Shown: positions 33,663 through 63,000 of the stretch, one piece after another
How positions within the stretch are numbered: the first letter of the stretch is position 1
Layout of the letters: every line of letters begins with the position of its first letter
Assembly: GCF_902713615.1 (NCBI RefSeq)
Contig: NC_052149.1
Location: forward strand, 67,445,443-67,509,442
Direction of reading: 5' to 3'
DNA: 64,000 bases
Origin: Scyliorhinus canicula
Taxonomy: Eukaryota
The notes under the pieces: generated by a model
The model's database searches: none
The model's input: the letters and a program-made list of their open reading frames with translations, nothing else
What the model was told of the DNA's origin: nothing
Program-made: the position numbers and the translations under genes

Positions 33663-33879
33663 GGGGGGTGGGTCAGTCAATCCGGGAAAGGGATTTGGAC
33701 CGGAGTGTGGGGGTTGGTCAGACCGGGAGTGAAGGGATTGGGTGGGGTTGGTGTGCCGGGTCCACTTGTGGGTGGGTGGGGTTTCTACCCAAACTCTAAT
33801 TCTGGTGGATGCGGAAAGGCAGCAGTGTTCAGACCCACTCTGCCTAGCAAGTGATCTTCTCACCTTCAGGCTCACCACC

Positions 33880-36972: not shown

Positions 36973-37462
36973 TTAAATTGTGAATACAATCAGTTAAATT
37001 CATTGTCTCCTGAGGGTGAATGACAGACAACACAATTGCTCCAGTTCACTGCAGGAAATATATGCAATTGTTTTGTTGCTTCTGCAGGCACCCTGATCTA
37101 TCTAAATATTCATAGTATTGAACCACTGTGAATTGAGTAAGACTCTGCAGAAGAAAGTACAAATGAGTTTAATTCTCTTTGTGCCCTTGGGAGACAAACA
37201 TGTGCTCTGGCATCCGACAAGTCTTGTAACATATGTTCACTGCGAAATATCCTCTTTGGGTCGCTTTTAAGAACAAAAGGCCTCCGTAACTCAATAACAA
37301 GTAGAAGTTATGTCAGCACACAAAACAACTTTAACATTTCCCTTGTATTACTATGCTTTATAATAGTTACAAAGGGATCCTAAATCGAAGGCATAAACTC
37401 TCAGAAGTGAAAAATTGAGGTGCCGTTTGCTTGATTGCCCTGGAATACCAGGTGATGCAAGG

Positions 37463-37760
37463 TTGGATTGGATTGGTTTCTTGTCACGTGTACCTAGGTG
37501 CAGTGAAAAGTATTGTTCTGCGTGAAGCTCAAGCACATCATTCCACATATGAAAAGAAAATATATAAGGCAAACAAAAAATACACAATATAAATACATAG
37601 ACACAGGCATCGGGTGAAGCATTCAGGGCTGTAGTACTACTCAGTAGAGAAGATTTGTGAAGAGATCAGATCAGTCCATAAGAGGGTCGTTTAGGAGTCT
37701 GGTAACAGCGGGGAAAAAGCTGTTTTTGAATCTGTCAGTGCGTGTTCTCAAACTTTTGTA
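37463..37760 (-). mobile_element. Rex1/Babar-like LINE 3' end
   Basis: (TTGGA)n tail and 'gtctggtaacagcggggaaaaagctgtttttgaatctg' resemble this clade's 3' region; family assignment from memory. Confidence 0.55.
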
Positions 37761-39908
37761 GCGAGGGTGAGAGTTCAATTATAAATATCAACATATATCC
37801 ATGAACGTAGTCTTCACAATTACAATGTCGGGTAAAATCATAAAATGAACTGTGCTAACCCAAATGGAACTTTTTTCTGCTCAACAGTTGTTGAGTAAAA
37901 TTAAGAAGCGAGAATAAGAAATTAGTCACTACTGTTTTAAAAATACTGTGCGAATGTTCAGAGGATAGATTTTGAGAAGGAAAAATGGCACTGGGCTGAG
38001 ATCGGAATGTCGTTATCAGCTTGCCTGCCATGTACTAACAAACCCAACTACTAGGTTATATGAATCAGGGTAAACACGGCTTGATTTTAGAAGAGCAGTA
38101 AAAGATATAACTGCAAAAACCCACCCAGTTCTGACAAAGGTTGGGGGGCCAGCAAGGCTCCTAAAAAGAAGCGATAATCACATTCGCCTGGAAAAGTAAT
38201 GCACAAACATTAAGAAACAAAATATTAATAAGAATCACCCGTTAATGAAACAAAAATAATTAAGGGCAGCAGGACCATTTATTATGACCGAAAGACGTGA
38301 GCTAATCTTCTGGCTGAACATCAAAAAAAGAGGAGCCACCCCAATATGTCTGTTATAATGTAGACCTGATGATCCTCTTGCGTGTTCACCTTTAGGCCCC
38401 TTCCACGATCTGGTAATGTAAATTACAGAAATACTTGATCCTTAGAATACAAGAGTAGAAATCCATGAATTCCCAACCCTCTAAAAACTAGAAACAAACA
38501 GACAGAATGTGAAAACAAACAACATTCAACTACCTCTTCTCCCATTAGGGCCTGAGACACAGCATTATTCACCCCATGAACCAGAAGCAGCAGTCCCACT
38601 TCAGCCTCCGCCTTTTGCTGATGACAGCTGGCAGCTGCAGACGCATCGAGAAAGAGCCCCCTGCGCTTTGCTAGCAATCACAGGAATCACTCCACATCTG
38701 TCAGCAAGGAACGGACAGAGACCCTAAAGGCACATTATTGGAAAATAAATTGACTACAAAGGGTTACAAATATCCCCTGCCAACAAAAAAAGTAACAGAA
38801 AATTATTACAGTAAAGTTCAGCAACTATAAAACTCCAGCAAATGAATAGCATGATCGATCTATCTTTCAAGTTAGCCAGCACAAGATTTCCTTCAAATAT
38901 GGTTTGAAAAAGCAAAGAACTAATAAAACATTCTGAAATCAAATTTAGCAACCAAAAAGAGATTTTTATTAGCAAGCAGCTTGAAGAAGCTTTCAATTAA
39001 ATCTAGAGTACTGCACTCTGGTGATTATTCCACTGGACTAATAATCCAGAAATTGCAGGAGAATGTTCTAACGTTTTTGACCCATTTGGATATGGGGTGG
39101 GGGGGGGGGGGGGGGGGAGGTGTCATACCGAGCATGAGGACTCACAATTTGGTGTGTGTGTGTTCCCTGCACGACAGCATGAGTGTGACACCGCCTCATG
39201 ATTGACAGGCTTGGTTTTCAGTCGAGTGTGGGTGAGCTCTGAAGGAGGGTATAACACAATTAGATCTTCACCATGACTGGGCATGGGCTGACCCTGAGGG
39301 CAGGGACTTCGATCCAGCTGGGGGATTTGGAGGCCTGGGCAGAAGTGGAGTTGGGTGAGGGGAAAATGGGTTAAGAGTTGTCACTGGGAGAGAGGACAGC
39401 AGCGATCAGAGGCTTTGTGAGGAAATAATCAGATAAGTGGAAAGGCGTAGAGATTTGGAAGTTCAGACGTCGCCATGGCCGCTTGAGAATTTGAAAGTGT
39501 AAAAATGCTACATTCCCCAGTACTAACCTCGCTCTGCTTGAAAACAAAATCACTGAATGAGAGAAAGTGCTAATTGTGTTGTTAGTAATTGCTGCTACTT
39601 CAATTGATTAGAGGCAGGACCAGCTGGAAGATTTTGAAATGGGTTGGCAATCATTTCCCAGACTCATTTTAAAAATGTATTTGGAGCTCTGGCAGCCCAT
39701 AATTATTTTCTCCTCTCCCCTTCTGACCTCCTGTCATTTCTGAAGTTCTGTTTCACGATTCTGTTATTATCCATTTTAAAATGGCCTTCATTCACATGCC
39801 ATTAGTCATGCTATTCTACTATAGAAGGCATCACTGCCAAGCCATGCACAAATGTGCTCGCAGGCTGAATCCACATTCTCTTTTCCCTTGCTTGTGATGG
39901 CCAATTGC

Positions 39909-40136
39909 AGGGCAGCACAGTGGCGCAGTGGGTTAGTCCTGTTGCCTCACGGCGGCAAGGTCCCAGGTTCGATCCTGGCTCTGGGTCACTGTCTGTGTGG
40001 GGTTTGCACATTCTCCCCGTGTTTGCGTGGGTTTTGCCCCCACAACCCAAAGATGTGCAGATTGGCCACGCTAAATTGTCCCTTAATTGGAAAACAATGA
40101 ATTGGGTACTCTGAATTTATTTAAAAATAATAATAA
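39909..40136 (+). mobile_element. HE1/V-type SINE, poly(A) variant
   Basis: 15-bp TSD gtgatggccaattgc (39894-39908, 40137-40151). Confidence 0.92.
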
Positions 40137-40377
40137 GTGATGGCCAATTGCTTCCTTCTGTGCAGTGCTGATTTTTGCTTTTAATAAGGTGGCAGTGAGA
40201 CTGGAACCAATGGATGGTGTTGGGTTTATACCATTGTATCCTTTTCTAATTTGGATATTTTGGATTTGTAGCTGTTGTTCTGATGGATGTGTGGATGTTA
40301 GAGAAGGCGTACGGATGCTGCAGTTTTACAGCAGTACCATGGTGGAATGTATCCTTCTTCCTGTCGCAGTAGTGACA

Positions 40378-41190
40378 CAACAACAACTTATATTTATTTA
40401 GAACCTCAAACATAATGAAATATTCCCAAGGTCCTTCATAAGTGCAATATTGAACAAAATATGGCCCCGAGTCATTTAAGGGAAATTAGGACAGTAAAGG
40501 AGGGAAGTGAAGTAACAGACAGGGAGAGGTGTCGGGAGGGTATCTCAGAGCTTGGAGCCGAAGCAACGGAAAATACAGCCACTGATAGTGGAGCGATTCT
40601 AATTGCAGATGGGCAAGAGGCCAGATTTAAAGCATTGAAGGTACCTTGGAGTGATGTGGGACTGAAGATGATTACAGATTTAGGGAGGGGAGGGGCACGG
40701 TCATGGATGGACTTGAAAACAAAGATGAGAATTTTAAAATAAAGCCATTTCTTGTTTGCAGGCCATTATAGGTCAATGACACAGGGGGTGGTGATTGGGC
40801 AACCGGATTTAAACAGCTTCAAGGTTATGGAGGGTAGAATGTGGGAGACCATCCAGGAGTGCATTTGTATAATCAAATCTAGAGGTAACAAAGGCATGAA
40901 AGATGGGGTTTGGCAGCAGATGGGTTAAGACAGGTGCGATATTATGAGTTGGAAATAAGCAATCTTAGTAATGGCATGAATATATGGTAGGAAGTTCACC
41001 TTGGGATCAAACATGATACCAAGATAGGAATGGATTTGTTCAGACTGTTGCCAGGAAGAAGAGTGGGATCAGTAGCTAGGGAATGAAGTTTGAATCGGGG
41101 ACCAAACACAATGGTTTTCATCTTCCCGTTGTTAATTGGGATAAATTTCTGCTCATCCAGTACTGGATGTCAGATGAGCAGTCCATTAAT
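40378..41190 (-). mobile_element. L2 LINE 3' fragment
   Basis: 'caacaacttatatttatt...cccaaggtccttca' L2-type tail followed by degenerate ORF2 3' sequence. Confidence 0.7.
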
Positions 41191-41817
41191 CTTTGCCCTG
41201 TGTGACCACGTCCACCAGAGTCTTGAAGTTGTGCAGATGCGTTGAGCGGGTAAAATGTGGGAAGTCCAATGCTGTGGTTACTGCTCAGTTCTGTGTTGTA
41301 TGTCATCTCGAATGCTGTTTGTCCTGGGGAAGTAGGCTTGAAGTGGCCAGCAGCAGGTCAGCATTGTTTGGAAGGGCCGCGAAGGACCACTCCTGCTCCT
41401 CTTAATTTTTTCATGAAAAAGTGAGGTTAATTTCTGGTGCTGTTTTTTTAAGTGGCATCCAGCAATACCTTTTAAACACAACTAGTATAGGTCACTTACT
41501 GCCTGGAACAGATGAGTGGATAACCTATGACTCTAGATTTGCATATTACAAAGCCTCCCACTTACTTAGGCAAGAGGCTGCTCGTCATTTATAAGTCCTT
41601 CTGAAAGATATGTCACATCACCCTTGGGCCTTAATGGGGTGGCCACGGTAACCCCTAGTTACTCATTCGTCAGGCAAGAAATGTGCCAACCATTGAAAAT
41701 AACACTCCCCTACCCCTCCCCCACCACGCTTCCCACCAGTTTATCTTAATCCATTTTTTCATGATATTGGATATTGTTTTGGACCACCTCAAAGTCTATC
41801 ATATTTCAAGTTGCAGT

Positions 41818-42236
41818 GGAGGCAGTGGCATAGTGACATTGTCGCTGGACTACTAATCCAGAAACCCCTTGGTGTTTAGATGTGTAGATCAGGTGGGGTT
41901 ACGGGAATAGGGTGGGGGAGCAGGGCAAAGTGAGGTGCTCTTTCAGAGGGTCGGTGCAGACCTCTGCCCAGTAGGGATTCTATGGGTCTGTTGTAATGCT
42001 CTGGGGCCCCAGGTTCGAATCCCACCATGGCAGATGGTGAAATTTGAATTCAATAAAATCTGGTATTAAATGTCTAATGATGACCATGACACCATTGTCG
42101 ATTGCCTTAAAGACTCCTCTGATTCACAAGGAAATATGCCTTCCTTGCCATTCTGGCAATTGACTCTTAAGTGCCCTCAGGGGTGGGCAATCAATGCTGG
42201 CCCAGCCAGCGACTCCCATATCGCATGAACAAATAA
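41818..42236 (+). mobile_element. tRNA-derived SINE (AmnSINE2-like) with an HE1 3' fragment inserted (~41870-41985)
   Basis: Head 'gtggcatagtg..gctggactactaatccaga', B-box ggttcgaatccc, tail 'gggcaatcaatgctggcccagccagcga' shared with the second CR1 family. Confidence 0.65.
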
Positions 42237-42602
42237 TCTTGTGCTAATTTTATGACTGTAGAAAAAACATGAACACAAAATATTGCAGAGCGAGGCCAAA
42301 ATGATTGATAAAATTTAAAAAAATATTTGGAACAAAAGAGATTCAAAATTTTGCCCTTCAGAGATTGCACACAATGTTGTTAAAGTTTGAATTTATAAAA
42401 TAGGAACACATTGGAGTGACCTCCCTTTATGTTTCCTGCTGTTTGTCCTTCTGTAATCTAAATTCAAGAATGGGCTAATGCGAAGGAAATAGTTAAAGAA
42501 TGACAATTAACTTATTTCACATCAGTTTCTGTTGCCTTTATAACCTGAAGAATAGGAATTTACTTATTAACTATTCAGGTAAATAAACTTGAATCAATAA
42601 GT

Positions 42603-42800
42603 AAATCCGCCACAGTCCCAGATGACCATAGGCTGCCTGGTGGTGATTTAACCTGAGGATTCCCACACCTCAGGCAAGGGTCAAGATAGAGAAGGTGGGT
42701 CTTCATGAATATCCTCAGCCAGTACAGGAATTGAACCAAAGCTGTTGGTCTCCCTCTTTATCACAAACAGGCTGTCCAGCCAACTGAACTAAATTGACCA
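42603..42800 (-). mobile_element. Short tRNA-derived SINE (second head type)
   Basis: Minus head 'ttagttcagttggctggacagc...ggttcaattcctgtactggc' related to 50720-50798, with a different tail. Confidence 0.7.
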
Positions 42801-43907
42801 CCAAACTTGCATCACTGTGAATTGGCTTAAAATTTCAAGCACATTTATTGAGACTTGCAGCATCTGGAACATTGAGTCAATTGGAGCTTTTGGAATGTAA
42901 TGTGGTTGTTGTCATTGTTTTTCTTACCCATGTGGTTGCTGCTTATCTACGTGTTCCTTGGACATTTGCAACAACTTGATTTCATTGACTATGACTTATT
43001 TGCAGCAATAATAACATAGTTATAGAGCTCTACACCTGCTATTTTATTAAATAACAGATGTTGCTGAAGAAATGGAATCAGATCTAATATCTAGATTATG
43101 TGTCGGTTTAAAGCAATTATTCATAATTAAGCTGTAATCATACCCTCCCTATAGCTTCCTGAGCATTTTGTTTCAATTTGTTCTCAGCATATGGGCATCA
43201 TTGGCAAGGCTGGCATTTATTGGCCATCTCTTGTTGCCCTCTGAGGGTGTGACCTTCTTGGACTGCTGGTCTGTATGGTGACTGGCCTACTTGTGTCCCA
43301 TAAAATTATTTGATTACGCTCTCATAATGCTGTCAGGAGATCCTGAAATTTGACCCTTGTAGCAATTTGATACAACCTTGTCTTTCTAAAGCAAATGTTC
43401 CCCCCTAAAGGGAATTGGAGAACTATGTGGGATTTTACAACACCTTCGTAATGATGGTGGCATATATTACAGACTTTTTAAAAGCCTCTCAAACTGTTAG
43501 TGAGATTTGAACTCATGCTTATATTTCGCAGTAACATAACCATTACATTCCTGAACATTTCCTTTAAAAATGTCATTATTTTTTTGCTAAGTCCGAGTCT
43601 AGATGGGGATGATAGCAATGATTTGAGTTTAGCTGCTAATAAAATTTAATTACAAATGTGGATAAACATAAAATTGAATTATTCCCATCATAATTGACTG
43701 AAGTAAATGGGGAAAAGAAACCTTTTAAAAATCAAAGCCTTCTGTCTTGATTTTATGGTTCTAGTAGAATGTGTGCCCAGAATGGATGCAGAAAGCTAGC
43801 CCAAAGGTTGCTGAGCTGACTGCATGTAATTCTGGGTGTGAAGTCACTTGAGTAATTAACACATTCTCAGCAACATGTTGACCTTGTGTGAAAACTAACC
43901 TATAGGG

Positions 43908-44696
43908 TGTGACGAATATAAGAAATGGTCATATTTTATCATTTGTATTTTTGCAGTAATGTTATTAAAACCAAGGTTAAAATGCTTGCAGACAGTGGGC
44001 AGGATTCTCCCAGCCCTGCACCGGGCCGGAGAATCCCCGTGAATGGGCCATGCCGCCCCAATGCCGGCACGCGTTTTTCCTCAGTGCGGAGAATCTGCGC
44101 CATTGGCGCCGGCGTGGTTGGCGCGGCGCCAGTCGCGGGCCGCACAACACGGCCAGCCTGCCAATTCTCCGGCCTGGATGAGCCGACCGGCTAAACAAAT
44201 CAAGACACATTTTGTAACAAAAGATAAAATAATTCTTTATGCTTTGTGCAGCTGGTGTGGCTAATTGGGGGGGGGGGGGGGGGGGGTTGCTTGGTCTGTC
44301 TGGAGTTGCTTCCAGTGCTCTAAGCTGAGCAGAGGACTATCAGCTTGGTCTTTATAAAAAGGTTTCTCACTCCAAGGACTCTGCGCTAAGATAAACAAGT
44401 AAAACCTGGTTGTCAGCTTTATATATAAGTGGTATTCAAAATATATGGGTTACTTTATTGGAATGTAGAGGCAGATTTCAGGAAGCAAGTTAAAATGTTG
44501 TACCTGTTCACTGTAAAGCTATTTCTTTGTTGCCATGCTGCTTAATTCTGTGTTCACATTAAAGGTTGTTTTATTATAAAAATTATCTACTGGTCAGTGT
44601 TATCACTCCTGTGGTGTAGTAACATTTCCTCACAGCTTAGTTGGGTTCTAATCCTGGATCTTAACCAAAATTGGGGTTCTGGTCCAGGCCATAACA
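43908..44696 (+). mobile_element. Solo LTR with a truncated MITE inserted at 43997-44190
   Basis: TGTGACG...ATAACA ends, 4-bp TSD aggg/agga (one mismatch); internal TIR gggcaggattctcc at 43997. Confidence 0.65.
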
Positions 44697-45287
44697 AGGA
44701 AGCTGTGGAAAATCTGGGAAAACTCCTACTTACAGGGACTTGGTTCTTTCTTGATGTGCGGCTGCTTAAAGCGTGCATTGTTTCAGGTTTTAAAAAGTTC
44801 AGCACAGGATGACAAATATTTGAAATCAGTGTCAAACCTTTGATGAAAACGAGGGATGAAGTGCTGGGCAAATATGAAGTGAAAGGAAACCAAACATGGA
44901 GTCAACATCTATCAAAGGTTGATGGAGTTGCAATGCATCTGAACCCTTGTTTGGTGGTGACATGAAGTGGGTTTGAGGAAGGTTGTTTCTATATTGCACA
45001 CTTTCTATTCAGAGGGCAACAGCATAGCACATCATGAGGTGGCAACCAGGCTTGATGGTCTGTACAATACTTGGGTACCAGACACAAGGACAGCCCTGTG
45101 CACAACGTGTGATGTACAGTTACATATGTACTTTATCCCTCCATAGCTCATTCTCCAATTCTAGGATTCCTTTGAAACCTAACGAATTGCCATTGTGCCC
45201 ACTTCGGTTGCTGCAATTGAAAAAAAGTTTGAAGCAAGAAACAGAGTTAGAAATATGAATTTGCAGTGCAAAGCAAAAAAGTTTGAG

Positions 45288-45605
45288 AATCATAGAAACC
45301 CTACAGTGCAGAAGGAGGCCATACGGCCTAACATGTCTGCATCGACCCTCTGAAATAGCACCTTATCTAGGCCCACACCCCCACCCTATACCCATAACCC
45401 AGTAACCTCACCTAACCTTTTGGACACTAAAGGACAATGTAGAATGGCGGATCTACCTAACCTGTACATCTGTGGCCTGTGGGAGCACCCGGAGGAAACC
45501 CATGCAGACGTGGGGAGAATGTACAAACTCCACATAGACAGTCACCCAAGGCTGGAGTTGAACCCTGTGAGGCAGCAGTGTTAACCACTGAGCCACCATG
45601 CCGCC
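45288..45605 (-). mobile_element. HE1 SINE (CR1 tail)
   Basis: Reverse-complement similarity to HE1. Confidence 0.85.
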
Positions 45606-46879
45606 TTTCACAACACACATTAACGTACCGAGGAAATGCAAATAAATCAACAGTCTGTAATAAATCAAACTTTTCAAATAGTAATATATTTTTTAAAATT
45701 CCGATCCTTTCAAGCCATTCCACAATCTGCTGAATCTGATCCATATCGGCAAGCAGAACTGGTGAAAAAGTCGTTAAATCCGGCATGAGACCACGATTTA
45801 AAATTTTAACATCCAAAATTTGGCTATTTTCCCGGCTGCCAATTGTAACCTGCACTTGCCCTTAGCAGGTTTTACATTGTCAGTGGAACTTCACAGAATT
45901 GGCGTTAATATTTGATTTACAGTTTAGAACTTTCCAGACATCTCACTCAAAACACAGGCAATGCCAACCGATGTGCATGCCAGTTCCGTTCTAGAACATA
46001 GAACATAGAACATAGAACAGTACAGCACAGAACAGGCCCTTCGGCCCTCGATGTTGTGTCTGAATCTCACTCCAAATGTGCAAGATTATATAGATTGATT
46101 TTCTAGTCAGTTGACAGAAAAATGCATGATTTCGCAACTTGTGCCAATGATGAATTACTAGTGACAAAGAAATGAAACCTACCCTGAAAAGTAAATACTA
46201 CTGGAGGGTGTATGTTTTCCCTGTTGTATGAATTATTGCAAAGAGATTCAGTGCATGAACAAGTGATGATATTTGCTTACTTTTGGCCAATCTCTAACAG
46301 TTCTCAGCAAAGGATTCCACCCTTGTAAGCATGAACGCCAGAGAGCCATTGATGAATTTGAGGTTCTCAATGTACAAGCATTGAACCATTCTTGTCAGGT
46401 GCATGGAAAAATAGGAAAAATGAGCTTGCATTTGGAATATAACAGCTGCAAAATTTGGCTCTGCAGCGGCAGAACTAGAGGCCCTCAAAACGGTTGGCAA
46501 CTTATTTCCGAACATGCAAACGTCAAGCTTATTTGATACACATTTTGCATATTTGGACTGTGCAGGTCCGGGGGACACCGTAACCCAAGAACTCCCAGCC
46601 AAATATGCGTTCAGCAGTATGTGGGATCCCACTGGCAGAATTTAAGGACCATTTTAAGCAAATTTTACAGAAATATTCTTGAAGGATATTTGGTAACTTT
46701 CTAGGTTTTGGAGGGCGTGTTGTTGCTTTCTGGTCAGAAGAGTTTTGCACCATGTGAACAGAAAGCCAGCTGGCATTACTAGTGGCTTTGCAGTTTCAGC
46801 CTCCCTTGATCTTGATCTACAACACAATGCAGGGAGATGGATTTGAGGCTGTAGAGAGGGGAAGCCATGTACAGAAGGA

Positions 46880-47838
46880 GGAGGAGGGCTCTCCACAGAA
46901 GGTCTTACCCATGAAAGATCTTCAGGGAGAACCTCTCCTACTGCCACCTCAGTCAAGAGCTGTATTTGCGGCAACTAACTTCATCAAGCAGGTGATCACA
47001 GAAATGTGTTAAATCCTACAATAATTTCCTAGCAGGACAAGGACACCACTGCGAGTGGTCACTGTTGCACTCATATTTCTTCGCAAACAGTTTCTTCTAG
47101 ACTGGAGCCGTTGACATTGCCCACATTTTCCAGTTTCTCTTAAAATTTGAGAAGGGAGGTATACCAGTAGAGGAGACTTCTCTTTAACTAGATAAAAGCA
47201 GTAGAAGTGGGCAGATGGCTTTACCAAAATAGCTGGATTCCCAATGATAAATGATTGGGGCAGCACAGTGGTTAGCACTACTGCCTCACAGCTCCAGGGT
47301 CCCGGGTTCAATTCTGGCCTTGGGCGATTGTCTGTGTGGAGTTTGCGCTTTCTCCCCATATCTGCGTGGGTTTCCTCTGGGTGCTCCGATTTCCTCCCAC
47401 AGTCCAAAGATGTGCATGTTAGGTGGATTGGCCATGCTAAATTGACTCTTGGTGTCCAAAAGGTTAGGTGGGGTTACTGGGTTACGGGGATAGGATGTAC
47501 GCATGGGCATAAGTAGGGTGCTCTTTCCAAGGGCGGTGCAGACTCGATGGGCCGAATGGCCTCCTTCTGCGCCGTAAATTCTATGATAAACAGGCAGAGG
47601 AAAGGAACTGCAAAGGATTCCACTCCATTAACATGTCGTTGGTTCTCAAGCAACACATTTTAGAGACAACCTTGCAATACTCACTGGAGGACGTCTCCAA
47701 AATCATAGTGATCTCCTCCACAATCTTGATTTTATGAGGGTTGTAGTCCTTGCCATCAGGCATACAGAGGCCATCTGGAACAGAGGAGGAAGTAGGGAGG
47801 AAGTCCATGGACCTCTTCGGTCCAGGCAGGTTTTGTGT
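46880..47838 (+). pseudogene. Harbinger transposase pseudogene interrupted by a SINE
   Basis: Frameshifted 'RRRALHRRSYP*KIFRENLSYCHLSQE..FIKQVITEMC..VTVAL..FFANSFF*TGAVDIAHIFQF..IAGFPM..NCKGFHSINMSLV..LQYSLEDVSKIIV..LHNL'. Confidence 0.75.
47258..47587 (+). mobile_element. HE1 SINE (CR1 tail)
   Basis: Full head, core and tail. Confidence 0.92.
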
Positions 47839-47842
47839 ACAG

Positions 47843-48790
47843 ACGAACAAAGAACAGGAACAGGCCCTTTGGCCCTCCAAGCCTGCGCTGATCACGTGTC
47901 CTATCTAGACCAAACATCTGTACCCTTCTATACCCCGTCTGTTCATGTGTCTATCCTGATAAGTCTTAAAGGTCGCTAACATATCTGCCTCAACCACCTC
48001 ACTTGCAGTGCATTCCAGACTATCACCACCCTCTGTGTAAAAGAAATTCCCCACACACATCTCCACTAAACCTATCCCCTTTCTCCTTGAACTTGTGCCC
48101 CCTTGGAATTGTCATTTCAGCCCTGGTAGAAAACCTGCAACTGTTCACCCTATCTACACCCCTCATAATTTTATAAACTTCTATCAGGTCGCCCCATCAC
48201 CCTCTGTCTTTCTAGGGAGAACAATCCAGCTTATTCAATCTCTCCCTCCTCATAGCTAATACTCTCCATACCAAGCACCATCCTTGTAAACCTTTCTGTA
48301 CTCTTTCCAAAGCCTCCACGTCCTTCTGGTAATGTGGTGACCAGAATTGGACACAGTATTCCAAATGTGGCCTAACCAACGTTCTATATGACTGTAACAT
48401 AATTTGCGAGCTTTTATATTCAGTACCCCGTCCTATGAAGGCAAGCATGCCATATGCTTTCTTTACCACTATTTCCACCTGTGCTACCACTTTTAAGGAT
48501 CTGTGGAGCTGCAAGCCCAGATCGCTGTGTGTCTATGCTCCTGGTGGTTCTGCCATTTATTGTATAGCTACCTCCTGAATTGGTCTACCAAAATGCATCA
48601 CTTCAAATTTGTCCGGGTTAAATTCCATCTGCCATTTCTCCGCCCAATTTTGTAGCCTATCCATATCCTGTTGTATTCTCTGACAATCTTCATCGTTATC
48701 AGCAACTCCTGGAATCTTAGCATCATCCGCAAACTTGCTAATCAGACGAGCTACGTTTTTTTCCAAGTCATTTATATATATTCCAAACAG
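47843..48790 (-). mobile_element. CR1 LINE 3' fragment, close to the 60076-63080 family
   Basis: ORFs with IYINDLE..ISKFADDAK..WAEKWQMEFN and LVRPHLEYCVQFWSP; 3' stem-loop and tail. Confidence 0.92.
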
Positions 48791-48919
48791 TATAAATCTT
48801 GCCATGAAAGATTTATGCAACAGCACATTCAATAATACATATACTGTGGTTCCTTTCGGATGTCATCCCATCACCACTGGATCTGGACAGTCCCCACTTT
48901 TCAATCCACCTACCATGTC

Positions 48920-51029: not shown

Positions 51030-51470
51030 CTATTATTGAAACACATGGAGGTTATACTAAATTTATATAGAATCAACAATACAGTGAAGTACTGGAGAAG
51101 GTATAAACAAGTGTACATAATACTAGACGTAGAGCAGATATTTCCTCTTCTGGGGCAAACTAGAACCAGAGGTCATAGTTTTAGGATAAGGGGTAGCAGA
51201 TTTAAAACAAGAGATGGGGACAAATTACTTCTTAAAGGGTCGTAAATCTTTGGAATTCACTACCCTAGAGTGTGGTGGATGCTGGGACATTGAGTAAGTT
51301 TAAGGAGAAGATAGACAGATTTTTAATCAGTAATGGGTTGAAGGGTTATGGAGAATGTGCAGGAAAGTGGAGTTGAGGCTGAGATGAAATCAGCCATGAT
51401 CGTATTGAATGGCAGAGCAGGCTCGAGAAGCTGAATTGCTTAATCCTACTCCTAGTCTTAGGTTCTCTCT
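51030..51470 (+). mobile_element. CR1 LINE 3' fragment with internal deletion
   Basis: 'IFPLLGQTRTRGHSFRIRGSRFKT' and 3' UTR 'tcagccatgatcgtattgaatggcagagcaggctcga'. Confidence 0.85.
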
Positions 51471-51934
51471 ATTACTGCAGTGGGTATCCAAAAAGACCCA
51501 ATCAGCACAGGAAAATTTGGTTCCTGCAGCACCATTTAGAAAAAAGTAAGGCAAGCCTCCCCTCATCTGAAAAGCCGGCATGGATTCAAAATTTACTTTG
51601 CCAGAACGATTTGGGCAGATGGAAGTGCCAGACCAGAAACAGAATTGGGCACTATGGAACAGGAGATGTTTAAGATACAGAATTGCATTGCATTAAATAA
51701 TAAATCCGAGGGCTGAGAAAGCTAATACTTTGGGCGGGATTCTCCGTAGCCCTTCGTAACGCGGGTTGCCTGCGAAAAAAATCGGTGTTAATCACTCCGG
51801 CGCCGGGGCCTTCTTTAAGGCCGCTATTCTCCGTTCCCGGAGGGGCTAGCAGCTGACTGACGCGATACGCGTCAGTTTCACCAGCTGCGGAAGTGGTGAG
51901 ACCCGGCGTTTTTTGGAGGATAAGGAGGAGAGAC

Positions 51935-52535
51935 GGGGGGTGGTGTGTGTTCCGGCATTTGGGGGGGTGGGGGTGTGTGTTCCGGCATTTGGGGGGGGTG
52001 TGTGTGTTCCGGCATTTGGGGGGGTGTGTGTGTTCCGGCATTTGGGGGGGGGGGGTGTGTGTGTTCCGGCATTTGGGGGGGGGGGTGTGTGTGTTCCGGC
52101 ATTTGGGGGGGGGGGTGTGTGTTCCGGCATTTGGGGGGGGGGGTGTGTGTTCCGGCATTTGGGGGGGGGGGTGTGTGTTCCGGCATTGGGGGGGGGGTGT
52201 GTTCCGGCATTGGGGGGGGGGTGTGTTCCGGCATTGGGGGGGGGGGTGTGTTCCGGCATTGGGGGGGGGGGGTGTTCCGGCATTGGGGGGGGGGGGGTGT
52301 TCCGGCATTGGGGGGGGGGGGGTGTGTTCCGGCATTGGGGGGGGGGTGTGTTCCGGCATTGGGGGGGGGGGGGTTCCGGCATTTGGGGGGGGGGTGTGTT
52401 CCGGCATTGGGGGGGGGGGGGTGTGTGTTCCGGCATTTGGGGGGGGGGGGGTGTGTTCCGGCATTTGGGGGTGTGTGTTCCGGCATTTGGGGGGGGGGGG
52501 GGGTGTGTGTTCCGGCATTTGGGGGGGGGGGGGGG
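51935..52535 (+). repeat. G-run minisatellite, 22 units of (GT)n-TTCCGGCATT(T)-Gn
   Basis: Counted by eye; unit ~23-33 bp with variable G runs. Confidence 0.95.
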
Positions 52536-53159
52536 TTGGGGGCAGCGGCGGGCAGAGAGGGGGGGCGACGGATGCCCGGGGCCAACGCACCGTCGCCCCC
52601 CCCCTCTGTCCGCCGCTGCCCCCTACCCCAACCCCCTCCCCTCACCACCCCTACCCCCTTCACCACCCCTACCCCACTCCAACGCCGCACCCACCCCCCC
52701 ACTAACGCCGCACCCCCCCCCCCCACTAACGGAGGAAGGAAGGGGGGGAGGAGGAGAGAGGGGGGGGTGTGGGTACCGGCCTTCAGAGGGAGGGGGACGG
52801 GGTGTGGGTTGCGGCGTTGAGGGTGGGGGTTGCGGCGTTGAGGGGGGGGGGACCCGGCGTTGAGGGGGGGGGGACCCGGCGTTGAGGGGGGGGGGACCCG
52901 GCGTTGAGGGGGGGGGGTTGCGGCGTTGCGAGAGATGGGGGGCGGCGTTGGAGGGGGGTAGGGGTGGTGGGGAGGGGCGTTGGAGGGAGGTAGGGGTGGT
53001 GAGGGGGGGGTGGTTAGGGTAGGGGGCAGCGGCGTACAGGGGGGGGGGCGACGGTGCGTTGGCCCCGGGCATCCGTCGCCCCCCCCCTCTCTGCCCGCCG
53101 CTGCCCCCCCCTCTCTGCCCGCCGCTGCCCCCCCCCTCTCTGCCCGCCGCTGCCCCCAA

Positions 53160-53740
53160 ACCCCCCCGATGGCCGCAACCCACTCCCCCGATGGCCGCAA
53201 CCCCCCGATGGCCGCAACCCACTCCCCCGATGGCCGCAACCCACTCCCCCGATGGCCGCAACCCACTCCCCCGATGGCCGCAACCCCCCCCGATGGCAGC
53301 AACCCCCCCCCCCCCCGATGGCCGCAACCCCCCCCCCCCGATGGCCGCAACCCCCCCGATGGCCGCAACCCACTCCCCCGATGGCCGCAACCCACTCCCC
53401 CGATGGCCGCAACCCCCCCGATGGCCGCAACCCACTCCCCCGATGGCCGCAACCCCCCGATGGCCGCAGCCCACTCCCCCGATGGCCGCAACCCACTCCC
53501 CCGACGGCCGCAACCCACCCCCCCGATGGCCGCAACCCACCCCCCCCCATGCCGCAACCCACCCCCCCTCCCCATGCCGCAACCCACCCCCCCCAATGCC
53601 GCAACCCACCGCCCCCCCCCAATGCCGCAACCCACCCCCCCCCCCCAATGCCGCAACCCACCCCCCCCCCCAATGCCGCAACCCACCCCCCCCCCAATGC
53701 CGCAACCCACCCCCCCCCCCAATGCCGCAACCCACCCCCG
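53160..53740 (-). repeat. C-run minisatellite, about 26 units of Cn-(GATG/AT/AAT)GCCGCAACCC(AC)
   Basis: Counted by eye; three unit variants in ordered blocks. Confidence 0.95.
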
Positions 53741-55947
53741 ACACTGAACGGCGTCAACCATCATCAGTGGTTGACGCCGTTTTAAATCAACTGTGATTTT
53801 CGCCGACGTGACCCGTGGCCACGTCGGCGGGACTTCGGCCCATCCGGGCCGGAGATTTAAGGTCAGTTCAAAAATAAGGAAATCCCGCCGGCGCCAGCTG
53901 TTTTCACAGGCCGCCGACGGGATTTGCACAACGCCGGTTTTTTTCCGGCGGGAGAATTACGAAACCTGCGGGAGCGGAAATGACGCCGCTTCCCGCCAAT
54001 TCTCCGACCCTGCGTGGGGTCGGAGAATCCCGCCCATTATTGTATTAAATTGATGCAATTGCTGATGATATGACAGGCAGACAAGAGGGATGGATTTTCT
54101 ACCTATGCCAACCATATGCCCTCCATGTCAATTCAGTAGTATCTGTTGACAGCTCTTCAACAGCTTTGGCACTTCTTTAATAGCTTTGACAGTTCTTTGC
54201 CAATTTAGCCAGTTCCTTGACAGCTTTGAAAATTCAATGGCTTTGAACTCCTTTTGCGCAAAGTTATGTTTACTTTAAACAATGAAAAAAGGGTTCTGTA
54301 CCACTACGAAAGTTGTCCTGGCACAATATCCAAAAGGGCTACCATACCTCTCCAAATGAATTAGCTTTTATGTGGTATGATCTGCACTGTCCAGGTTTTC
54401 ACACTGAAGACCTACCAAAATCTCACTTCAGTGGAGGAAGCTGGAAATGTAAATTGCCAGTTAAACTGCACATGCTTGAACCCCGGTCTGACTCCAGTCC
54501 CACTCCCACAAAATTAGGAATTGTTGTGTTCATGGATGAGATTTAGGATTTCCAGGTATGTCTACCAATTTGATCACAATGGTGAGATTCTCTGTCTGGC
54601 AAAACACATTGCTGTATCTCAGAGAAATGCATGGATACAATTACTGTTTTGAACGCAATTGATTTTTTTTTACAAAAGATGCGGGTGCAGCGCACCCATG
54701 CCGGCAGCCCAATTTTCCATCCTGCCAACTGGCCAATTGGGTTTCCCATTGTTGGCAGCCCCACATCGTCAGGAAATCCCCAGGTGTGGGTACGCTGCTT
54801 GCAGAGAATCCAGCCCACGGGTTTTAAAATCACAGCATTGATCCACCACAGATTTAGCAGTGCAACCGCTGAATTCCAAGAAGGAGGCCTATGCCAAAAC
54901 TGGAGAGCATTCCTCAGAAACATGCACGTGGATGACAGAAGGTCAACTTAAGAATTGGGGTTAAGAGTTGAATGTAAGCCTAGACCAGGAAGGCCGTAGG
55001 TTTTTTAGGACTAGTCGAGCTGGGAATAAATTATAGGGAGTTCAGCTCCCTATAATTCTGGTTCGGAGGTGACGCCACTTCTACTCCCTTCAGGTAAAAA
55101 TGTCTGTTGGTCCCTGATGGATGTTATTAGAACCCAATCTGCAGTCAAAGAAGCATCCCACCAGTTGAGCTGATCAGTGTAATATTATAGTAGGTTGGGA
55201 TAGGATTTGGATGGATAAGCCCTTCACACCATTTTAACATCCTTTTTCCCAGTTTCTGCTGTGCAAGTGGAGTTAACAAAACCATTTATACATTATGGCA
55301 TGGAATGTAATTAATTTCACAATTCCAAAATCAAATAGTTGTTTGTGAACATTAATTCAGGAATCACCTTATCGTTTCCTATATAAAATGTTGTAAGGAC
55401 AATTATTAGTAAGTCCCTGTCATATTTGATACAAATGCATATTGATGTACTGGCATTTAACAAATGTCAACCACCTTATGCCTCGCAGGTATTTTTTCCC
55501 TTTGATACCTATTCAATCTGTGGACCTGTTGATCTATAGGTCTGTCCTCCCAACTTCAGCACTTATCACAAGAACATTGCTATACTCTCTTGTTTGTTCA
55601 CATAGACCATACTTTCATATTCACCTCATTATTAGCTATTTCAAAAGTATGGATTAAGACCATATCATGTTTCACAAGTGAAAATTTAAATTTCTCAATG
55701 CTACAACAGTCAATAACCTTATTACAGGAAAATAAAACTGAAGGGTTGGCAATATTCCATTGGCAAATCCCAGCAAATTCTTGGGTTTACAAGATTAATC
55801 CTTTGCATTGTTTCATTTCAATCGTCCAAAGTCTTTTAATGTACAATAAAATTGTGTGTGCAGCCCTTAAAATATGGGGGTGTTCTAAGAGCTGAATTTT
55901 CCTTTCATTGGATTGGTCATATAGAATGTCTTAGCCATAATGTTTTT

Positions 55948-59169: not shown

Positions 59170-60075
59170 TCTTCTTTTAATTTATTCACAGACTGTGGGC
59201 ATTGAAGGTTCAGCAAAAATTTGTTGCCCATCCTTGATTGCCCTTAAGATGGTGATGGTGAACTGCCTTCTTCAATTGTCACAGTCCATGTGGTGCCATA
59301 ACACCATAGTGCTGTTAGGAAGGGAGGATCCAGGATTTTTACCCAGCAACAGTGAAGGAATGGTGATATATTTCCAAGTCATGATGGTGTGTAGCTAGGA
59401 GGGAAATTTGCAGGGGGTGGTCTTCCCTGCATTTTCCATTCTTGCCCTTTTAGATGGTAGAGGTCACTCGGGTTTGCAAGGTGTTGCCAAAGGAGTCTTG
59501 GTGACTTAATGTAGTGCATCTTGTGGAGAGTACACACTATTGCCACTTTATGTCCGTGTGGAGTTTGCACATTCTCCCCGTGTCTGCATGGGTCTTAGCC
59601 CCACAACTCAAAAAAATGTGCAGGGTAGGTGAATTGGCCATGATAAATGCCCCCATAATTGGAAAAAAAAAGAATTGGTGCTCTAAATTTATTTTAAAAA
59701 TAGATGATGTACAGGCTTTGACAAGCCAGGAGGCGAGTTACTCGCCACAAAATTTCCAGCGCCTAACTTGTTGCTGTGGCCACAGTATTTATATGGCCGG
59801 TCAATGATAAACCCAGGAGGTTGATAGTGGGGGATTCAGAAATGGTAATACTATTGAATGACAGGAGAAGAGGTTAGATTATCTGTTGTTGGTGATGGTC
59901 ATTGTCTGACATTTCTGTGGTGCAAATGTTACTTGCCACTTCACCAAAGCTGAATATTATCCAGGTCTTGCTGCATATATGGAGTCAGACTTCATTAGTA
60001 TCTGAGGAGTCATGAATGGTGCTGAACATTGTGCAATCATCTGTGAATAACCCCTTCTGATCATATGATGGTGGG
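59170..60075 (-). mobile_element. CR1-clade LINE (second family), left part; resumes at 63081
   Basis: Minus 'GLFTDDCTMFSTIHDSSDTNEV' RT motif; contains a 5'-truncated poly(A) SINE (~59550-59700); split by the young CR1. Confidence 0.75.
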
Positions 60076-63000
60076 CACTGGAGCAATAGGTCAGAAGGTG
60101 AAAGCATTGAGGGAGAGCTAGGGTATAGGGCCAGTCTGACTCTGAGGCAGAGCAGACAGGGAGATGTTGCTGAACACAGTGGGTCTGGTGGCCTGAAGTG
60201 CATATGTTTTAATGCAAGAAGTATTATGGGTAAGGCAGATGAACTGAGAGCTTGGATTAGTACTTGGAACTGTGATGTTGTTGCCATTACAGAGACCTGG
60301 TTGAAGGAAGGACAGGATTGGCAGCTAAATGTTCCAGGATTTAGATGTTTCAGGCGGGATAGAGGAGGATGTAAAAAGGGTGGCGGAGTTGCACTACTGG
60401 TTAGGCAGAATATCACAGCTGTACTACGGGAGGACACCTCAGAGGGCAGTGAGGCTACATGGGTAGAGATCAGGAATAAGAAGGGTGCAGTCACAATTTT
60501 GGCGGTTTACTACAGGCCTCCCAACAGCCAGCGGGAAATAGAGGAGCAGATAGGTAGACAGATTTTGGAAAAGAGTAAAAACAACAGGGTTGTTGTGATG
60601 GGAGACTTCAACTTCCCTAATATTGACTGGGACTCACTTAGTGCTAGGGGTTTGGACGGGGCAGAGTTTGTAAGGAGCATCCAGGAGGGCTTCTTAAAAC
60701 AATATGTAGACAGTCCAACTGGGGAAGGGGCTGTACTGGACCTGGTATTTGGGAATGAGCCCGGCCAGGTGGTAGAAGTATCAGTAGGGGAGCATTTCGG
60801 GAACAGTGCCCACAATTCAGTAAGTTTTAAAGTGCTGGCGGACAAGGATAAGAGTGGTCCTCGGGTGAATGCGCTAAATTGGGGGAAGGCTAATTATAAC
60901 AATATTAGGCGGGAACTGAAGAACCTAAATTGGGGGAGGATGTTTGAGGGTAAATCAACATCTGACATGTGGGAGGCTTTCAAGTGTCAGTTGAAAGGAA
61001 TTCAGGACCGGCATGTTCCTGTGAGGAAGAAGGATAAATACGGCAAATTTCAGGAACCTTGGATAACGAGAGATATTGTAGGCCCCGTCAAAAAGAAAAA
61101 GGAGGCATTTGTCAGGGCTAGAAGGCTGGGAACAGACAAAGCCTGTGTGGAATATAAGGAAAGTAGGAAAGAACTTAAGCAAGGAATCAGGAGGGCTAGA
61201 AGGGGTCACAATGAGTCATTGGCAAATAGGGTTAAGGAAAATCACAAGGCTTTTTACACATAGATAAAAAGCAAGAGGGTAGCCAGGGGAAGGTTTGGCC
61301 CTCTGAAGGATAGGCAAGGGAATCTATGTGTGGAGCCAGAGGAAATGGGCGAGGTACTAAATGAATACTTTGCATCAGTATTCACCAAAGAGAAGGAATC
61401 GGTGGATGTTGAGTCTGGAGAAGGGTGTGTAGATAGGCTGGGTCACATTGAGATCCAAAAGGATGAGGTGTTGGGCGTCTTGAAAAATATTAAGGTAGAT
61501 AGGTCCCCAGGGCCTGATGGGATCTGATGGGACCCAGAATACTGAAGGAGGCTAGAGAGGAAATTGCTGAGGCCTTGACAAAAATCTTTGGATCCTCACT
61601 GTCTTCAGGTGATGTCCCGGAGGACTGGAGAATAGCGAATGTTGTTCCTTTATTTAAGAAGGGTAGCAAGGATAATCCAGGGAACTACAGGCCGGTGAGC
61701 CTTATGTCAGTGGTAGGGAAATTACTGGAGAGAATTCTTCGAGACAGGATCTACTCCCATTTGGAAGCAAATGGACGTATTAGTGAGAGGCAGCATGGTT
61801 TTGTGAAGGGAAGGTCGTGTCTCACTAACTTGATAGAGTTTTTCAAAGCGGTCACAAACATGATTGATGCAGGTAGGGCAGTGGATGTTGTCTATATGGA
61901 CTTCAGTAGGCCTTTGACAAGGTCCCTCATGGTAGACTGGTACAAAAGGTGAAGTTACACGGGATCAGGGGTGAGCTGGCAAGCTGGATACAGAACTGGC
62001 TAGGTCATAGAAGGCAGAGAGTAGCAATGGAAGTGTGCTTTTCTGTTTGGAGGTCTGTGACTAGCGGAGTTCCGCAGGGATCAGTGCTGGAACCTTTGTT
62101 GTTCGTAGTATATACAAATGATTTGGAGGAAAATGTAACTGGTCTGATTAGTAAGTTTGCAGGCGACACAAAGGTTGGTGGAATTGCGGAGAGCAATGAG
62201 GACTGTCAGAGGATACAGCAGGATTTAGATTATTTGGAGACTTGGGCGGAGAGATGGCAGATGGAGTTTGATCTGGACAAATGTGAGGTAATGCATTTTG
62301 GAAGGTCTAATGCAGGTAGGGAATATACAGTGAATAGTAGAACTCTAAAGAGTATTGAAAGTCAGAGAGATCTAGGTGTACAGGTCCACAGGCCACTGAA
62401 AGGGGCAACACAAGTGGAGAAGGTAGTCAAGAAGTCATACGGCATGCTTGCTTTCATTGGCCGGGGCATTGGGTATAAGAATTGGCAAGTCATGTTGCAG
62501 CTGTATAGAATCTTAGTTAGACCACACTTGGAGTATAGTGTTCAATTCTGGTCGCCACACTACCAGAAGGATGTGGAGGCTTTAGAGAGGGTGCAGAAGA
62601 GATTTGCCAGGATGTTGCCTGGTATGGAGGGCATTAGCTATAAGGAGCGGTTGAATAAACTCAGTTTGTTCTCATTGGAACGATGAAGGTTGAGGGGCGA
62701 CCTGATAGAGGTCTACAAAATTATGAGGTGCATAGACAGAGTGGAGAGTCAGAGGCTTTTCCCCAGGGTAGAGGGGTCAATTACTAGGGGGCATAGGTTT
62801 AAGGTGCGAGGGGCAAGGTATAGAGTAGATGTACGAGGCAAGTTTTTTACACAGAGGGTAGTGGGTGCCTAGAACTCGCTGCTGGAGGAGGTGGTGGAAG
62901 CAGGGACGATAGCAACATTTAAGGGGCATCTTGATAAATACATGAATAGGATGGGAATAGAGGGATACGGACCCAGGAAGTGTGGAAGATTGTAGTTTAG

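What the first reader, a model, noticed from the sequence alone, without database searches (positions are those of the whole stretch)
51732..54035. Foldback Harbinger-type element with two opposed, homologous G-run minisatellite arrays around nested hairpins
Seen: inside perfect 15-bp TIRs the order is a 22-unit G-rich array (core TTCCGGCATTGGG), a self-complementary module (~52538-52622), a short central array (GGCGTTGA-Gn), the same module in inverted orientation (~53022-53107), and a ~26-unit C-rich array. The outermost units of the C-rich array read TTGCGGCATTGGG on the minus strand, one base from the left unit. The element is therefore close to two-fold symmetric and presents G-tracts on opposite strands at each end. 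Inference: this resembles a Foldback-type architecture built on Harbinger termini, able to form G-quadruplexes on both strands and a long fold-back. The arrays may be amplified binding sites for the transposon's Myb/SANT protein. I know of no description of this family, but cannot confirm novelty.
Basis: partly seen in the sequence, partly recalled or inferred. Interest (0 to 1): 0.72.

Follow-up and report, generated by a model that had tools for sequence, protein, structure and literature searches.

The report
Young shark transposon with mirrored arrays
A 2.3-kb non-coding cut-and-paste jumping gene of the Harbinger type, whose inside is built of short G-rich repeats laid out as a mirror image, sits here as an insertion that other chromosomes of the same species still lack; it is real and recent, but this architecture has been described before in other organisms.

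Summary

The new result is an empty-site allele. Short-read contigs from two samples of the same species join 51727 directly to 54035. The whole 2304-bp unit plus 3 bases is therefore one insertion, bounded exactly by the inverted ends, and it is still polymorphic.

Four relatives with the same ends lie in the window, and three have clean 3-bp target duplications. A decayed Harbinger transposase (DDE_Tnp_4) lies next to a terminus of the same type.

The best reading is a young non-autonomous PIF/Harbinger-type element. Its interior grew by repeat slippage and fold-back rearrangement in a source copy and was then moved intact.

G-quadruplex and fold-back potential are confirmed by computation only. 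The idea that the arrays are amplified binding sites is not supported, because the family's conserved subterminal motif is absent from them.

Harbinger elements with opposed subterminal arrays are already described in Medicago, and Tetris in Drosophila is a close analogue. First-stage notes of this scan list similar elements elsewhere in this genome. Interest is moderate.

The parts
51729..51731 (.). Left copy of the 3-bp target-site duplication. It reads TTT, whereas the empty allele and the right copy read ATT.
   Evidence: the joint 51727->54035 skips 2307 bases, which is 3 + 2304.
51732..51746 (+). Left terminal inverted repeat, GGGCGGGATTCTCCG.
   Evidence: 0 mismatches. A contig of a second species (X9) starts exactly at 51732 and runs into unrelated flank.
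51747..51949 (+). Left unique end. It holds the subterminal motif CCGCTATTCTCC (51821-51832), a small hairpin (51857-51875), CCGGCGTT (51903-51910) and a purine-rich leader (51923-51949).
   Evidence: Weakly homologous to the variable-type end of the relative at 27522-27629.
51950..52535 (+). Array A1: 22 units plus one partial unit, TTCCGGCATT(T)-Gn-(TG)n, period 24-28.
   Evidence: G4Hunter mean +1.74.
52538..52622 (+). Hairpin module M: arms of about 30 nt and an 18-nt loop.
   Evidence: (DNA MFE -53.6, z -9.8).
52623..52731 (-). Array A2 (C-rich on +): a short block ending in about 2.5 units whose minus-strand reading is TGCGGCGTTAGT-Gn.
   Evidence: It is the mirror image of 52937-53020.
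52732..52810 (+). Centre, or hinge, of the large palindrome. It is purine-rich and repeats the leader of the left end in direct orientation.
52811..53020 (+). Array A3: 5-7 units (TT/AC)(G/C)CGGCGTTGAG-Gn, followed by a GGTAGGGGTGGTGA-type block.
53022..53107 (-). Hairpin module M', an inverted copy of M with its loop and arm variants swapped.
   Evidence: MFE -48.7, z -9.6; about 95% identity over the hairpin.
53080..53157 (-). 24-bp tandem triplication of the outer hairpin arm.
   Evidence: (period 24-25, 3.2 copies, 96% matches).
53160..53739 (-). Array A4: 26 units on the minus strand, with a 252-bp higher-order period.
   Evidence: G4Hunter mean -1.74.
53740..54020 (-). Right unique end. 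It holds hairpins at 53747-53781 and 53806-53834, CCGGCGTT on the minus strand at 53930-53937, and ATTCTCC motifs. From about 53825 outward it is the conserved end type of the family.
   Evidence: A 31-nt block is 97% identical to the relative at 21119-21149.
54021..54035 (-). Right terminal inverted repeat.
   Evidence: Contigs of many other loci diverge exactly after 54035 (table 7).
54036..54038 (.). Right copy of the target-site duplication (ATT).

Best explanation
This is a young, non-coding, non-autonomous DNA transposon of a high-copy shark family. The family has the terminus GGGCGGGATTCTCCG, subterminal ATTCTCC and CCGCTATTC motifs and a 3-bp target duplication, which makes it PIF/Harbinger-type.

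It moves in trans. A Harbinger transposase, with its Myb-like partner, made by an autonomous relative recognises the ends, cuts the whole unit out and pastes it in with a 3-bp duplication. Only the insertion event is shown here. The identity of the enzyme is inferred.

The interior is cargo with no coding capacity. One ancestral unit of about 22-28 bp, a CCGGC/GCGGC core plus a G-run, is also present once in each subterminal region as CCGGCGTT. This unit was amplified by replication slippage or unequal exchange. It was then duplicated in inverted orientation twice by fold-back or template-switch repair, giving four arrays (-> <- -> <-) that converge on two hairpins. Each array was afterwards homogenised on its own.

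This happened in a source copy, and the finished 2.3-kb structure was then transposed to this site. G-quadruplex and cruciform/fold-back potential are by-products. They probably make the element unstable rather than useful.
For: Shown:
- Empty-site contigs in two samples and studies (X2: 490 nt at depth 4.3, about half the flank depth of about 8; X1: 192 nt) join 51727 to 54035 with 1 nt of overlap. They leave a single ATT.
- The ends are exact. Contigs from other loci and from a second species diverge at 51732 and 54035.
- Relatives with the same ends sit at 14286-15000, 20614-21297 and 26919-27629, with TSDs TAT, CTG and CAT.
- A DDE_Tnp_4 remnant (E 7e-13) lies at 3216-3683, 1.35 kb inside a terminus GGGTGTGATTCTC. 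That terminus carries CCGCTATTC 52 bp in. This 9-mer occurs only 4 times in the window, always within 100 bp of a family terminus.
- No ORF of the element matches a Pfam family.
- The ends, hairpin module and centre have summed contig depth of 10^3-10^4 against about 5 in the flanks. 53 contigs cross the module, and the family majority base at 52610 equals the right-hand copy.
- All arrays share one unit theme. CCGGCGTT lies symmetrically at 51903 (+) and 53930 (-).
- A single unexpanded unit sits in the truncated relative at 44057.
- Long G/C runs are common in family copies.
- The same architecture and the same explanation (abortive gap repair at VNTRs, inversions) are published for Medicago PIF/Harbinger elements.
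Against: - The four TSDs (TAT, CTG, CAT, ATT) do not follow the usual TWA preference. This copy's left TSD differs by one base (TTT against ATT).
- No intact autonomous partner with these ends was seen. The in-window link rests on one decayed copy with an 11/14 terminus match.
- Short-read contigs cannot confirm the array lengths or the order of the interior blocks at this locus.
- Summed contig depth is not a copy number. The interior is much less deep in X2 than in X1, which may reflect poor reading of poly-G or a rarer interior.
- The order of the rearrangement steps is inference.
Confidence: 0.75

Rival explanations
1. The arrays are functional. They would be amplified binding sites for the transposase or its Myb/SANT partner, or a fold-back device that brings the two ends together, kept because they raise the element's mobilisation rate.
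For: The array core resembles CCGGCGTT, which occurs once in each subterminal region in TIR-symmetric orientation. CCGGC is 7-21 per kb in family copies against 1.1 per kb elsewhere. Galileo carries multiple transposase-binding sites in long repeat-bearing TIRs (PMC3688188). This element with its arrays did transpose.
Against: ATTCTCC, the one motif conserved in the termini of all family members, is absent from the arrays even at one mismatch. The roughly 700-bp relatives lack arrays and still have clean TSDs. Left and right array units have drifted apart, and so have inner and outer units, which does not fit a conserved site. No binding data exist.
Confidence: 0.1
2. The interior is partly an assembly artefact. 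A long-read chimera or a mis-resolved palindrome could have created the second hairpin and the inner arrays, or distorted the array lengths.
For: Palindromes and long G-runs are hard to sequence and assemble. No record spanned the stretch. Interior depth is very uneven between the runs.
Against: Both hairpin orientations, the inner blocks and both arrays are covered by many independent short-read contigs in a run of a different study. The skipped length in the empty allele equals the assembled element plus 3 bp, with exact TIR ends. First-stage notes list similar mirrored elements elsewhere in the genome, but these are unchecked.
Confidence: 0.07
3. The arrays and palindrome grew in place after a small MITE-like element inserted here.
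For: Minisatellites can expand quickly. Unit variants are arranged in blocks, and a 252-bp higher-order repeat shows local duplication.
Against: The insertion is still polymorphic, so it is young. The interior needs at least two inverted duplications plus divergence of four arrays. The module and inner blocks are high-copy elsewhere in the genome.
Confidence: 0.05
4. It is a member of the classical Foldback group, related to Mutator-like elements, rather than of PIF/Harbinger.
For: It has inverted arrays of tandem repeats around a central domain and a strong fold-back prediction.
Against: The TSD is 3 bp, not 8-10 bp. The inverted symmetry does not reach the termini. The ends are shared with relatives linked to a DDE_Tnp_4 remnant.
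Confidence: 0.03

Closest known systems
MtPH-A6-4 PIF/Harbinger-like elements of Medicago truncatula (Grzebelus et al. 2007, PMC2213677)
   Same: Non-autonomous PIF/Harbinger elements with short TIRs and a 3-bp TSD. [quoted passage not shown] The repeats promote internal inversions. Empty sites document mobility.
   Different: It is a plant family with an unrelated 60-bp AT-rich unit. No G-runs, no second-level palindrome and no hairpin hinges are reported. Sequence relatedness to the shark family was not tested and is not expected.
Tetris and its MITE relative DAIBAM in Drosophila virilis (Dias et al. 2014, PMC4079207)
   Same: A non-autonomous, modular, fold-back-like element whose inverted arms contain tandem repeats. 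It shares only its terminal portions with a small MITE, and both are presumably moved by one autonomous element. It is a source of satellite DNA.
   Different: Tetris has 8-10-bp TSDs and is assigned to Mutator. Its repeats are 220 bp. Here the TSD is 3 bp, the units are 22-28 bp with G-runs, and the outer 200-290 bp are not mirrored.
Drosophila Foldback (FB) elements and Galileo (PMC3688188)
   Same: Long inverted arms built of tandem repeats around a middle domain. In Galileo the arms carry several transposase-binding sites (abstract).
   Different: In those elements the inverted arms run to the termini and belong to other superfamilies (Mutator-like, P). Here only 15 bp are inverted at the tips, and the mirrored arrays are internal.
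Tourist-type MITEs such as mPing (my own knowledge of the field)
   Same: Non-coding, short TIRs, 3-bp TSD, mobilised in trans by PIF/Harbinger/Pong transposase together with a second protein. Insertion polymorphism marks activity.
   Different: MITEs are under about 800 bp and have a TWA target. This element is 2.3 kb, and the four TSDs seen are not TWA.

Membership tests
PIF/Harbinger superfamily (non-autonomous member) | 3-bp target-site duplication | tested here: met
   TAT, CTG and CAT flank three relatives. At this copy the empty allele has one ATT and the filled allele has TTT...ATT.
PIF/Harbinger superfamily (non-autonomous member) | Usual target preference TWA (typical rather than obligatory) | tested here: not met
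   0 of 4 TSDs are TTA or TAA.
PIF/Harbinger superfamily (non-autonomous member) | Short terminal inverted repeats | tested here: met
   15 bp, perfect. The literature gives 14 bp in Medicago and 25-50 bp in fish.
PIF/Harbinger superfamily (non-autonomous member) | [quoted passage not shown] | tested here: inconclusive
   One decayed DDE_Tnp_4 ORF (E 7e-13) lies 1.35 kb from a terminus matching 11 of 14 bases, with the family's CCGCTATTC subterminal motif. No Myb-like ORF, no second end and no intact copy are in the window. The protein word search gave one unrelated fragment.
Foldback (FB-like) elements | Long inverted repeats that reach the termini and make up most of the element | tested here: not met
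   The left and right ends align only over the 15-bp TIR. The mirrored arrays start 200-290 bp inside.
Foldback (FB-like) elements | Inverted arms composed of tandem repeats around a middle domain | tested here: met
Foldback (FB-like) elements | 8-10-bp TSD, as in most described foldback elements (Mutator-related) | tested here: not met
   The TSD is 3 bp. The criterion is taken from PMC4079207.
MITE | Small size (below about 800 bp), non-coding, high copy number | tested here: not met
   This copy is 2304 bp. It is non-coding and its ends are high-copy. The relatives of about 700 bp fit the definition.
G-quadruplex-forming minisatellite | Four or more G-tracts able to fold, shown biophysically | not testable with these tools
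   Prediction only. G4Hunter means are +/-1.74. 31% of 25-nt windows score 1.5 or above and 25% score -1.5 or below, against 1.5% in the rest of the window.

The most novel reading that the evidence does not exclude
The family is still transposing in living catsharks, which would make it a naturally active Harbinger system in a vertebrate. On this reading the mirrored G-run arrays are not passive cargo. They are retained because they help mobilisation, either as extra protein-binding sites or by folding the two ends together, while seeding G-quadruplex-prone, unstable minisatellites across the genome.
Probability: 0.1. Interest if true: 0.7.

Novelty: new member of a known kind. Interest (0 to 1): 0.42.

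Why it matters
Insertions of DNA transposons that are still polymorphic are uncommon in vertebrates, and no naturally active Harbinger has been shown in one (my own knowledge of the field). The empty-site allele found here is direct evidence that a 2.3-kb Harbinger-type element moved recently in this shark lineage. It points to a possibly still functional transposase and partner pair worth looking for.

The element also shows that a transposase can carry kilobase-scale palindromic, G-quadruplex-prone arrays to new sites. That is one way in which unstable minisatellites and satellite seeds spread.

The architecture itself is not new. It parallels the Medicago MtPH-A6-4 elements and Tetris.

Tried and rejected
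- **Rfam over 51300-54500.** Only sub-threshold matches of the hairpin to assorted miRNA precursor models (23-46 bits against gathering scores of 58-137). These are generic hairpin hits.
- **Pfam on six ORFs through the element.** Nothing found. The ORFs are artefacts of G/C-rich repeats.
- **Nested or head-to-head insertion of two elements.** No internal TIR-like sequence lies between 51832 and 54022.
The arm starts CAGCG, which fits the loose hAT end rule. However, there is no 8-bp duplication around either module and no related sequence elsewhere in the window. The question is left open, not supported.
- **Two scans of metagenome contigs.** The hairpin loop 22-mer gave 0 hits. The terminal 18-mer gave 25 hits, all chance matches in GC-rich contigs with unrelated upstream sequence.
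- **Protein word search with the DDE_Tnp_4 remnant**, meant to reach an intact shark Harbinger with its flanks. It gave one 130-aa fragment on a 1.2-kb contig, which was of no use.
- **Earlier findings searched by sequence.** Blank.
- **Source genome and Dfam/Repbase.** Neither could be searched, so copy numbers, a family consensus and prior curation remain unchecked.
- **Summed contig depth.** Used only as a sign of high copy number, not as a copy count.
Full report
**1. The observation**

- **Ends.** GGGCGGGATTCTCCG lies at 51732-51746 and, reverse-complemented, at 54021-54035. Neither copy has a mismatch. The window holds 11 matches at up to 2 mismatches, against 0.03 expected.
- **Left array.** Tandem Repeats Finder reports 51935-52533, period 24-28, about 22 copies. 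Splitting at the core gives 22 units plus one partial unit of TTCCGGCATT(T), a G-run of 5-15 and (TG)n.
- **Right array.** Tandem Repeats Finder reports 53160-53739, period 22-25, about 26 copies. Splitting gives 26 units on the minus strand. The six outermost read TTGCGGCATTGGG, one base from the left core. The inner ones have drifted to TTGCGGCCATCG...AGTGGG, with a 252-bp higher-order period.
- **Hairpins.** The 85-base module at 52538-52622 folds as DNA at -53.6 kcal/mol (shuffles -27.7, z -9.8). Its copy at 53022-53107 folds at -48.7 (z -9.6). Alignment shows that the second copy is the first turned around, including the 18-nt loop and the two arm variants. Identity is about 95% over the hairpin and 80% over 231 columns once the adjoining blocks are included.

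**2. Finer anatomy**

G/C skew in 48-bp bins runs G, C, G, C, with switches near 52580, 52735 and 53065. The interior therefore holds four arrays in alternating orientation:
- A1 (+, long)
- A2 (-, short, 52623-52731)
- A3 (+, 52811-53020)
- A4 (-, long)

A1 and A2 converge on hairpin M. A3 and A4 converge on M'. A2 and A3 diverge from an 80-bp purine-rich centre.

All four arrays use variants of one unit, a (C/G)CGGC core followed by TT and a G-run. The centre repeats, in direct orientation, the purine-rich leader that precedes A1 in the left end. That similarity lies in low-complexity sequence and I treat it as suggestive only. The outer arm of M' is triplicated in tandem at 53080-53157.

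Folded as a single DNA strand, the whole element gives -825 kcal/mol, against -619 +/- 8 for dinucleotide shuffles (z -26). 618 of 844 pairs are centred near 52820-52860, and 518 of them span more than 600 nt.

G4Hunter means are +1.74 (A1), -2.16 (A2), +1.83 (A3) and -1.74 (A4). 31% of 25-nt windows in the element score at least +1.5 and 25% score at most -1.5. In the rest of the window, 1.5% pass either limit. These are predictions, not measurements.

**3. It is one mobile unit, and the insertion is polymorphic**

Public short-read contigs were laid on 51300-54500. One 490-nt contig of run X2 covers 51587-51727 and continues directly at 54035-54383. It has one other letter on each side. Its depth is 4.3, where the flanks total about 8. 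A 192-nt contig of run X1, from another sample and study, shows the same joint. The overlap at the joint is one base, so a k-mer assembler could not have jumped it by mistake.

The empty allele reads ...TAATAC ATT ATTG... The assembled allele reads ...TAATAC TTT [2304 bp] ATT ATTG... The insertion is therefore the element plus 3 bases, bounded exactly by the TIRs. Its target duplication ATT carries one changed base on the left. Depths fit heterozygosity in both samples, but coverage is low.

Either a recent insertion or a precise excision would give this picture. Both imply recent transposase activity.

The termini are confirmed from elsewhere. Contigs from other loci run on unlike after 54035. 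A contig from a second species (X9) matches 51732-51895 with one mismatch and then leaves into unrelated sequence.

**4. Family and superfamily**

The window holds relatives with the same ends:
- 14286-15000, TSD TAT
- 20614-21297, TSD CTG
- 26919-27629, TSD CAT
- a truncated copy from 43997
- several solitary ends

One end type is conserved: the TIR followed by a terminal hairpin ending in GGTCGGAGAAT. The other end is variable, and this element has one of each.

ATTCTCC/GGAGAAT occurs 51 times in the window, against about 8 expected, clustered in these copies.

A scan of 150 ORFs found one DDE_Tnp_4 (PF13359) match, at 3216-3683 on the minus strand, E 7e-13. About 1.35 kb from it, facing outward, lies a terminus GGGTGTGATTCTC (5035-5047). 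The 9-mer CCGCTATTC sits 52 bp inside that terminus. This 9-mer occurs four times in the window, each time within 100 bp of a family terminus, and one of the four is at 51821 in this element.

Together with the 3-bp TSDs, this places the family in PIF/Harbinger. The link is not complete:
- The copy is decayed.
- Its second end and its Myb-like gene were not found.
- None of the four TSDs is the usual TWA.

Published genome papers report PIF/Harbinger and Tourist elements in sharks without detail. A teleost survey did not find them in the elephant shark.

**5. Abundance**

Summed contig depth is 5-12 in the unique flanks. It is 5,000-48,000 over the ends and 28,000-47,000 over the hairpins and centre in X1. 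In X2 the ends reach 5,500-49,000, but the hairpins and centre only 300-1,400. The tool warns that this is not a copy number, so I use it only to say that the ends and the hairpin/centre blocks are high-copy. The difference between runs in the G-rich interior could be a sequencing bias, and I cannot tell.

53 X1 contigs cross 52610, and nearly all carry A there, the base of the right-hand copy. The module therefore exists in many other places, and C at 52610 is private to this copy. Several joints, such as 52541 to 52950 and 53166 to 53613, look like family copies with other internal layouts.

**6. How it most likely came about and works**

- **Shown:** a non-coding unit (no Pfam family in any ORF) with Harbinger-type ends was inserted or excised recently as a whole.
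- **Inferred (mobilisation):** it is moved in trans by a Harbinger transposase and its partner, through the TIR and the ATTCTCC-type subterminal motifs.
- **Inferred (interior):** the interior arose in a source copy.

Three observations point to an origin of the unit within the family's own sequence:
- The unit core occurs once in each subterminal region, as CCGGCGTT at 51903 (+) and 53930 (-), symmetric with respect to the TIRs.
- A single TGCCGGCATTGGGG sits in the truncated relative at 44057.
- Long G/C runs are common in family copies: C17 at 14369, C33 at 17028 and G20 at 44267.

Slippage would amplify the unit. Two rounds of fold-back or template-switch repair would give the arrangement -> <- -> <- with hairpin hinges. 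Independent homogenisation would then make the four arrays differ.

**7. The binding-site idea**

The only motif conserved across all family termini, ATTCTCC, is absent from all arrays even at one mismatch. The array-free relatives transposed normally. The CCGGC-type core is enriched in family ends, at 7-21 per kb against 1.1 per kb elsewhere. A role for that core therefore cannot be excluded, but nothing here supports it.

**8. Comparison and novelty**

The closest known cases are:
- the Medicago MtPH-A6-4 elements, which share the superfamily and the layout of opposed subterminal arrays
- Tetris/DAIBAM in Drosophila virilis, a fold-back-like non-autonomous element that shares only its tips with a MITE
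- FB and Galileo

This element fails the Foldback definition on two counts. The inverted arms do not reach the termini, and the TSD is 3 bp.

First-stage notes of this scan list similar mirrored elements inside Harbinger ends elsewhere in the same genome (s1-200293, s1-228709). One follow-up (s1-228647) describes a young high-copy catshark element with hairpins at the hinges of internal palindromes. I could not test those notes. They agree with the present reading. That the genome is a catshark also comes from those notes, because run names were coded.

**9. Verdict**

The element is real and well delimited. It is a young, polymorphic member of a known kind. The G-run units, the two-level palindrome and the evidence of recent movement in a vertebrate give it moderate interest. 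Nothing here points to a new mechanism.

Noticed in passing
window 3216-3683 (-), terminus at 5031-5047: A decayed Harbinger transposase fragment (DDE_Tnp_4, E 7e-13). A family-type terminus GGGTGTGATTCTC and the subterminal CCGCTATTC lie 1.35 kb away. The second end and the Myb-like gene were not found and may lie before the window start.
   Followed up: partly
window 14286-15000, 20614-21297, 26919-27629, 43997-44190; possibly 36160-36703: Relatives of about 700 bp with the same TIR, clean 3-bp TSDs (TAT, CTG, CAT) and GC-rich interiors full of GCGCATGCGC-type palindromes. One copy is truncated. TSDs show no TWA preference.
   Followed up: partly
window 51300-51513: Just upstream lies a very high-copy repeat, with summed contig depth of 18,000-61,000 against about 5 in unique flank. 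Many contigs diverge at 51389 and 51424. It looks like the tail of a retroposon, and no tRNA head was found.
   Followed up: no
window 60061-62683 (+): LINE remnant with endonuclease (Exo_endo_phos, E 1e-18) and reverse-transcriptase (RVT_1) ORFs. A weak RVT_1 piece also lies at 48560-48862 (-).
   Followed up: no
window 17028 (C33), 14369 (C17), 44267 (G20), 35009 (G21), 39099 (G19), 469 (G17), 1145 (G15): Long G or C homopolymers outside the element. At least three lie in or beside copies of the same transposon family, so long G-runs seem to be a family habit.
   Followed up: no
run X9 (coded organism B), laid on window 51732-51895: A second species holds the left end with 1 mismatch in 164 nt, at a different locus. 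None of this window's unique flank matched at 88% or better. This fits a very close species or, less likely, transfer between species.
   Followed up: no
window 54146-54198: A short 20-bp tandem repeat (2.7 copies, 78% matches) about 110 bp downstream of the element. It is unrelated to the arrays.
   Followed up: no
window 51950-52535: Each left-array unit contains CCGGAA on the minus strand, an ETS-like core, and a CCGG site. That gives 22 evenly spaced copies. This is purely a sequence remark.
   Followed up: no
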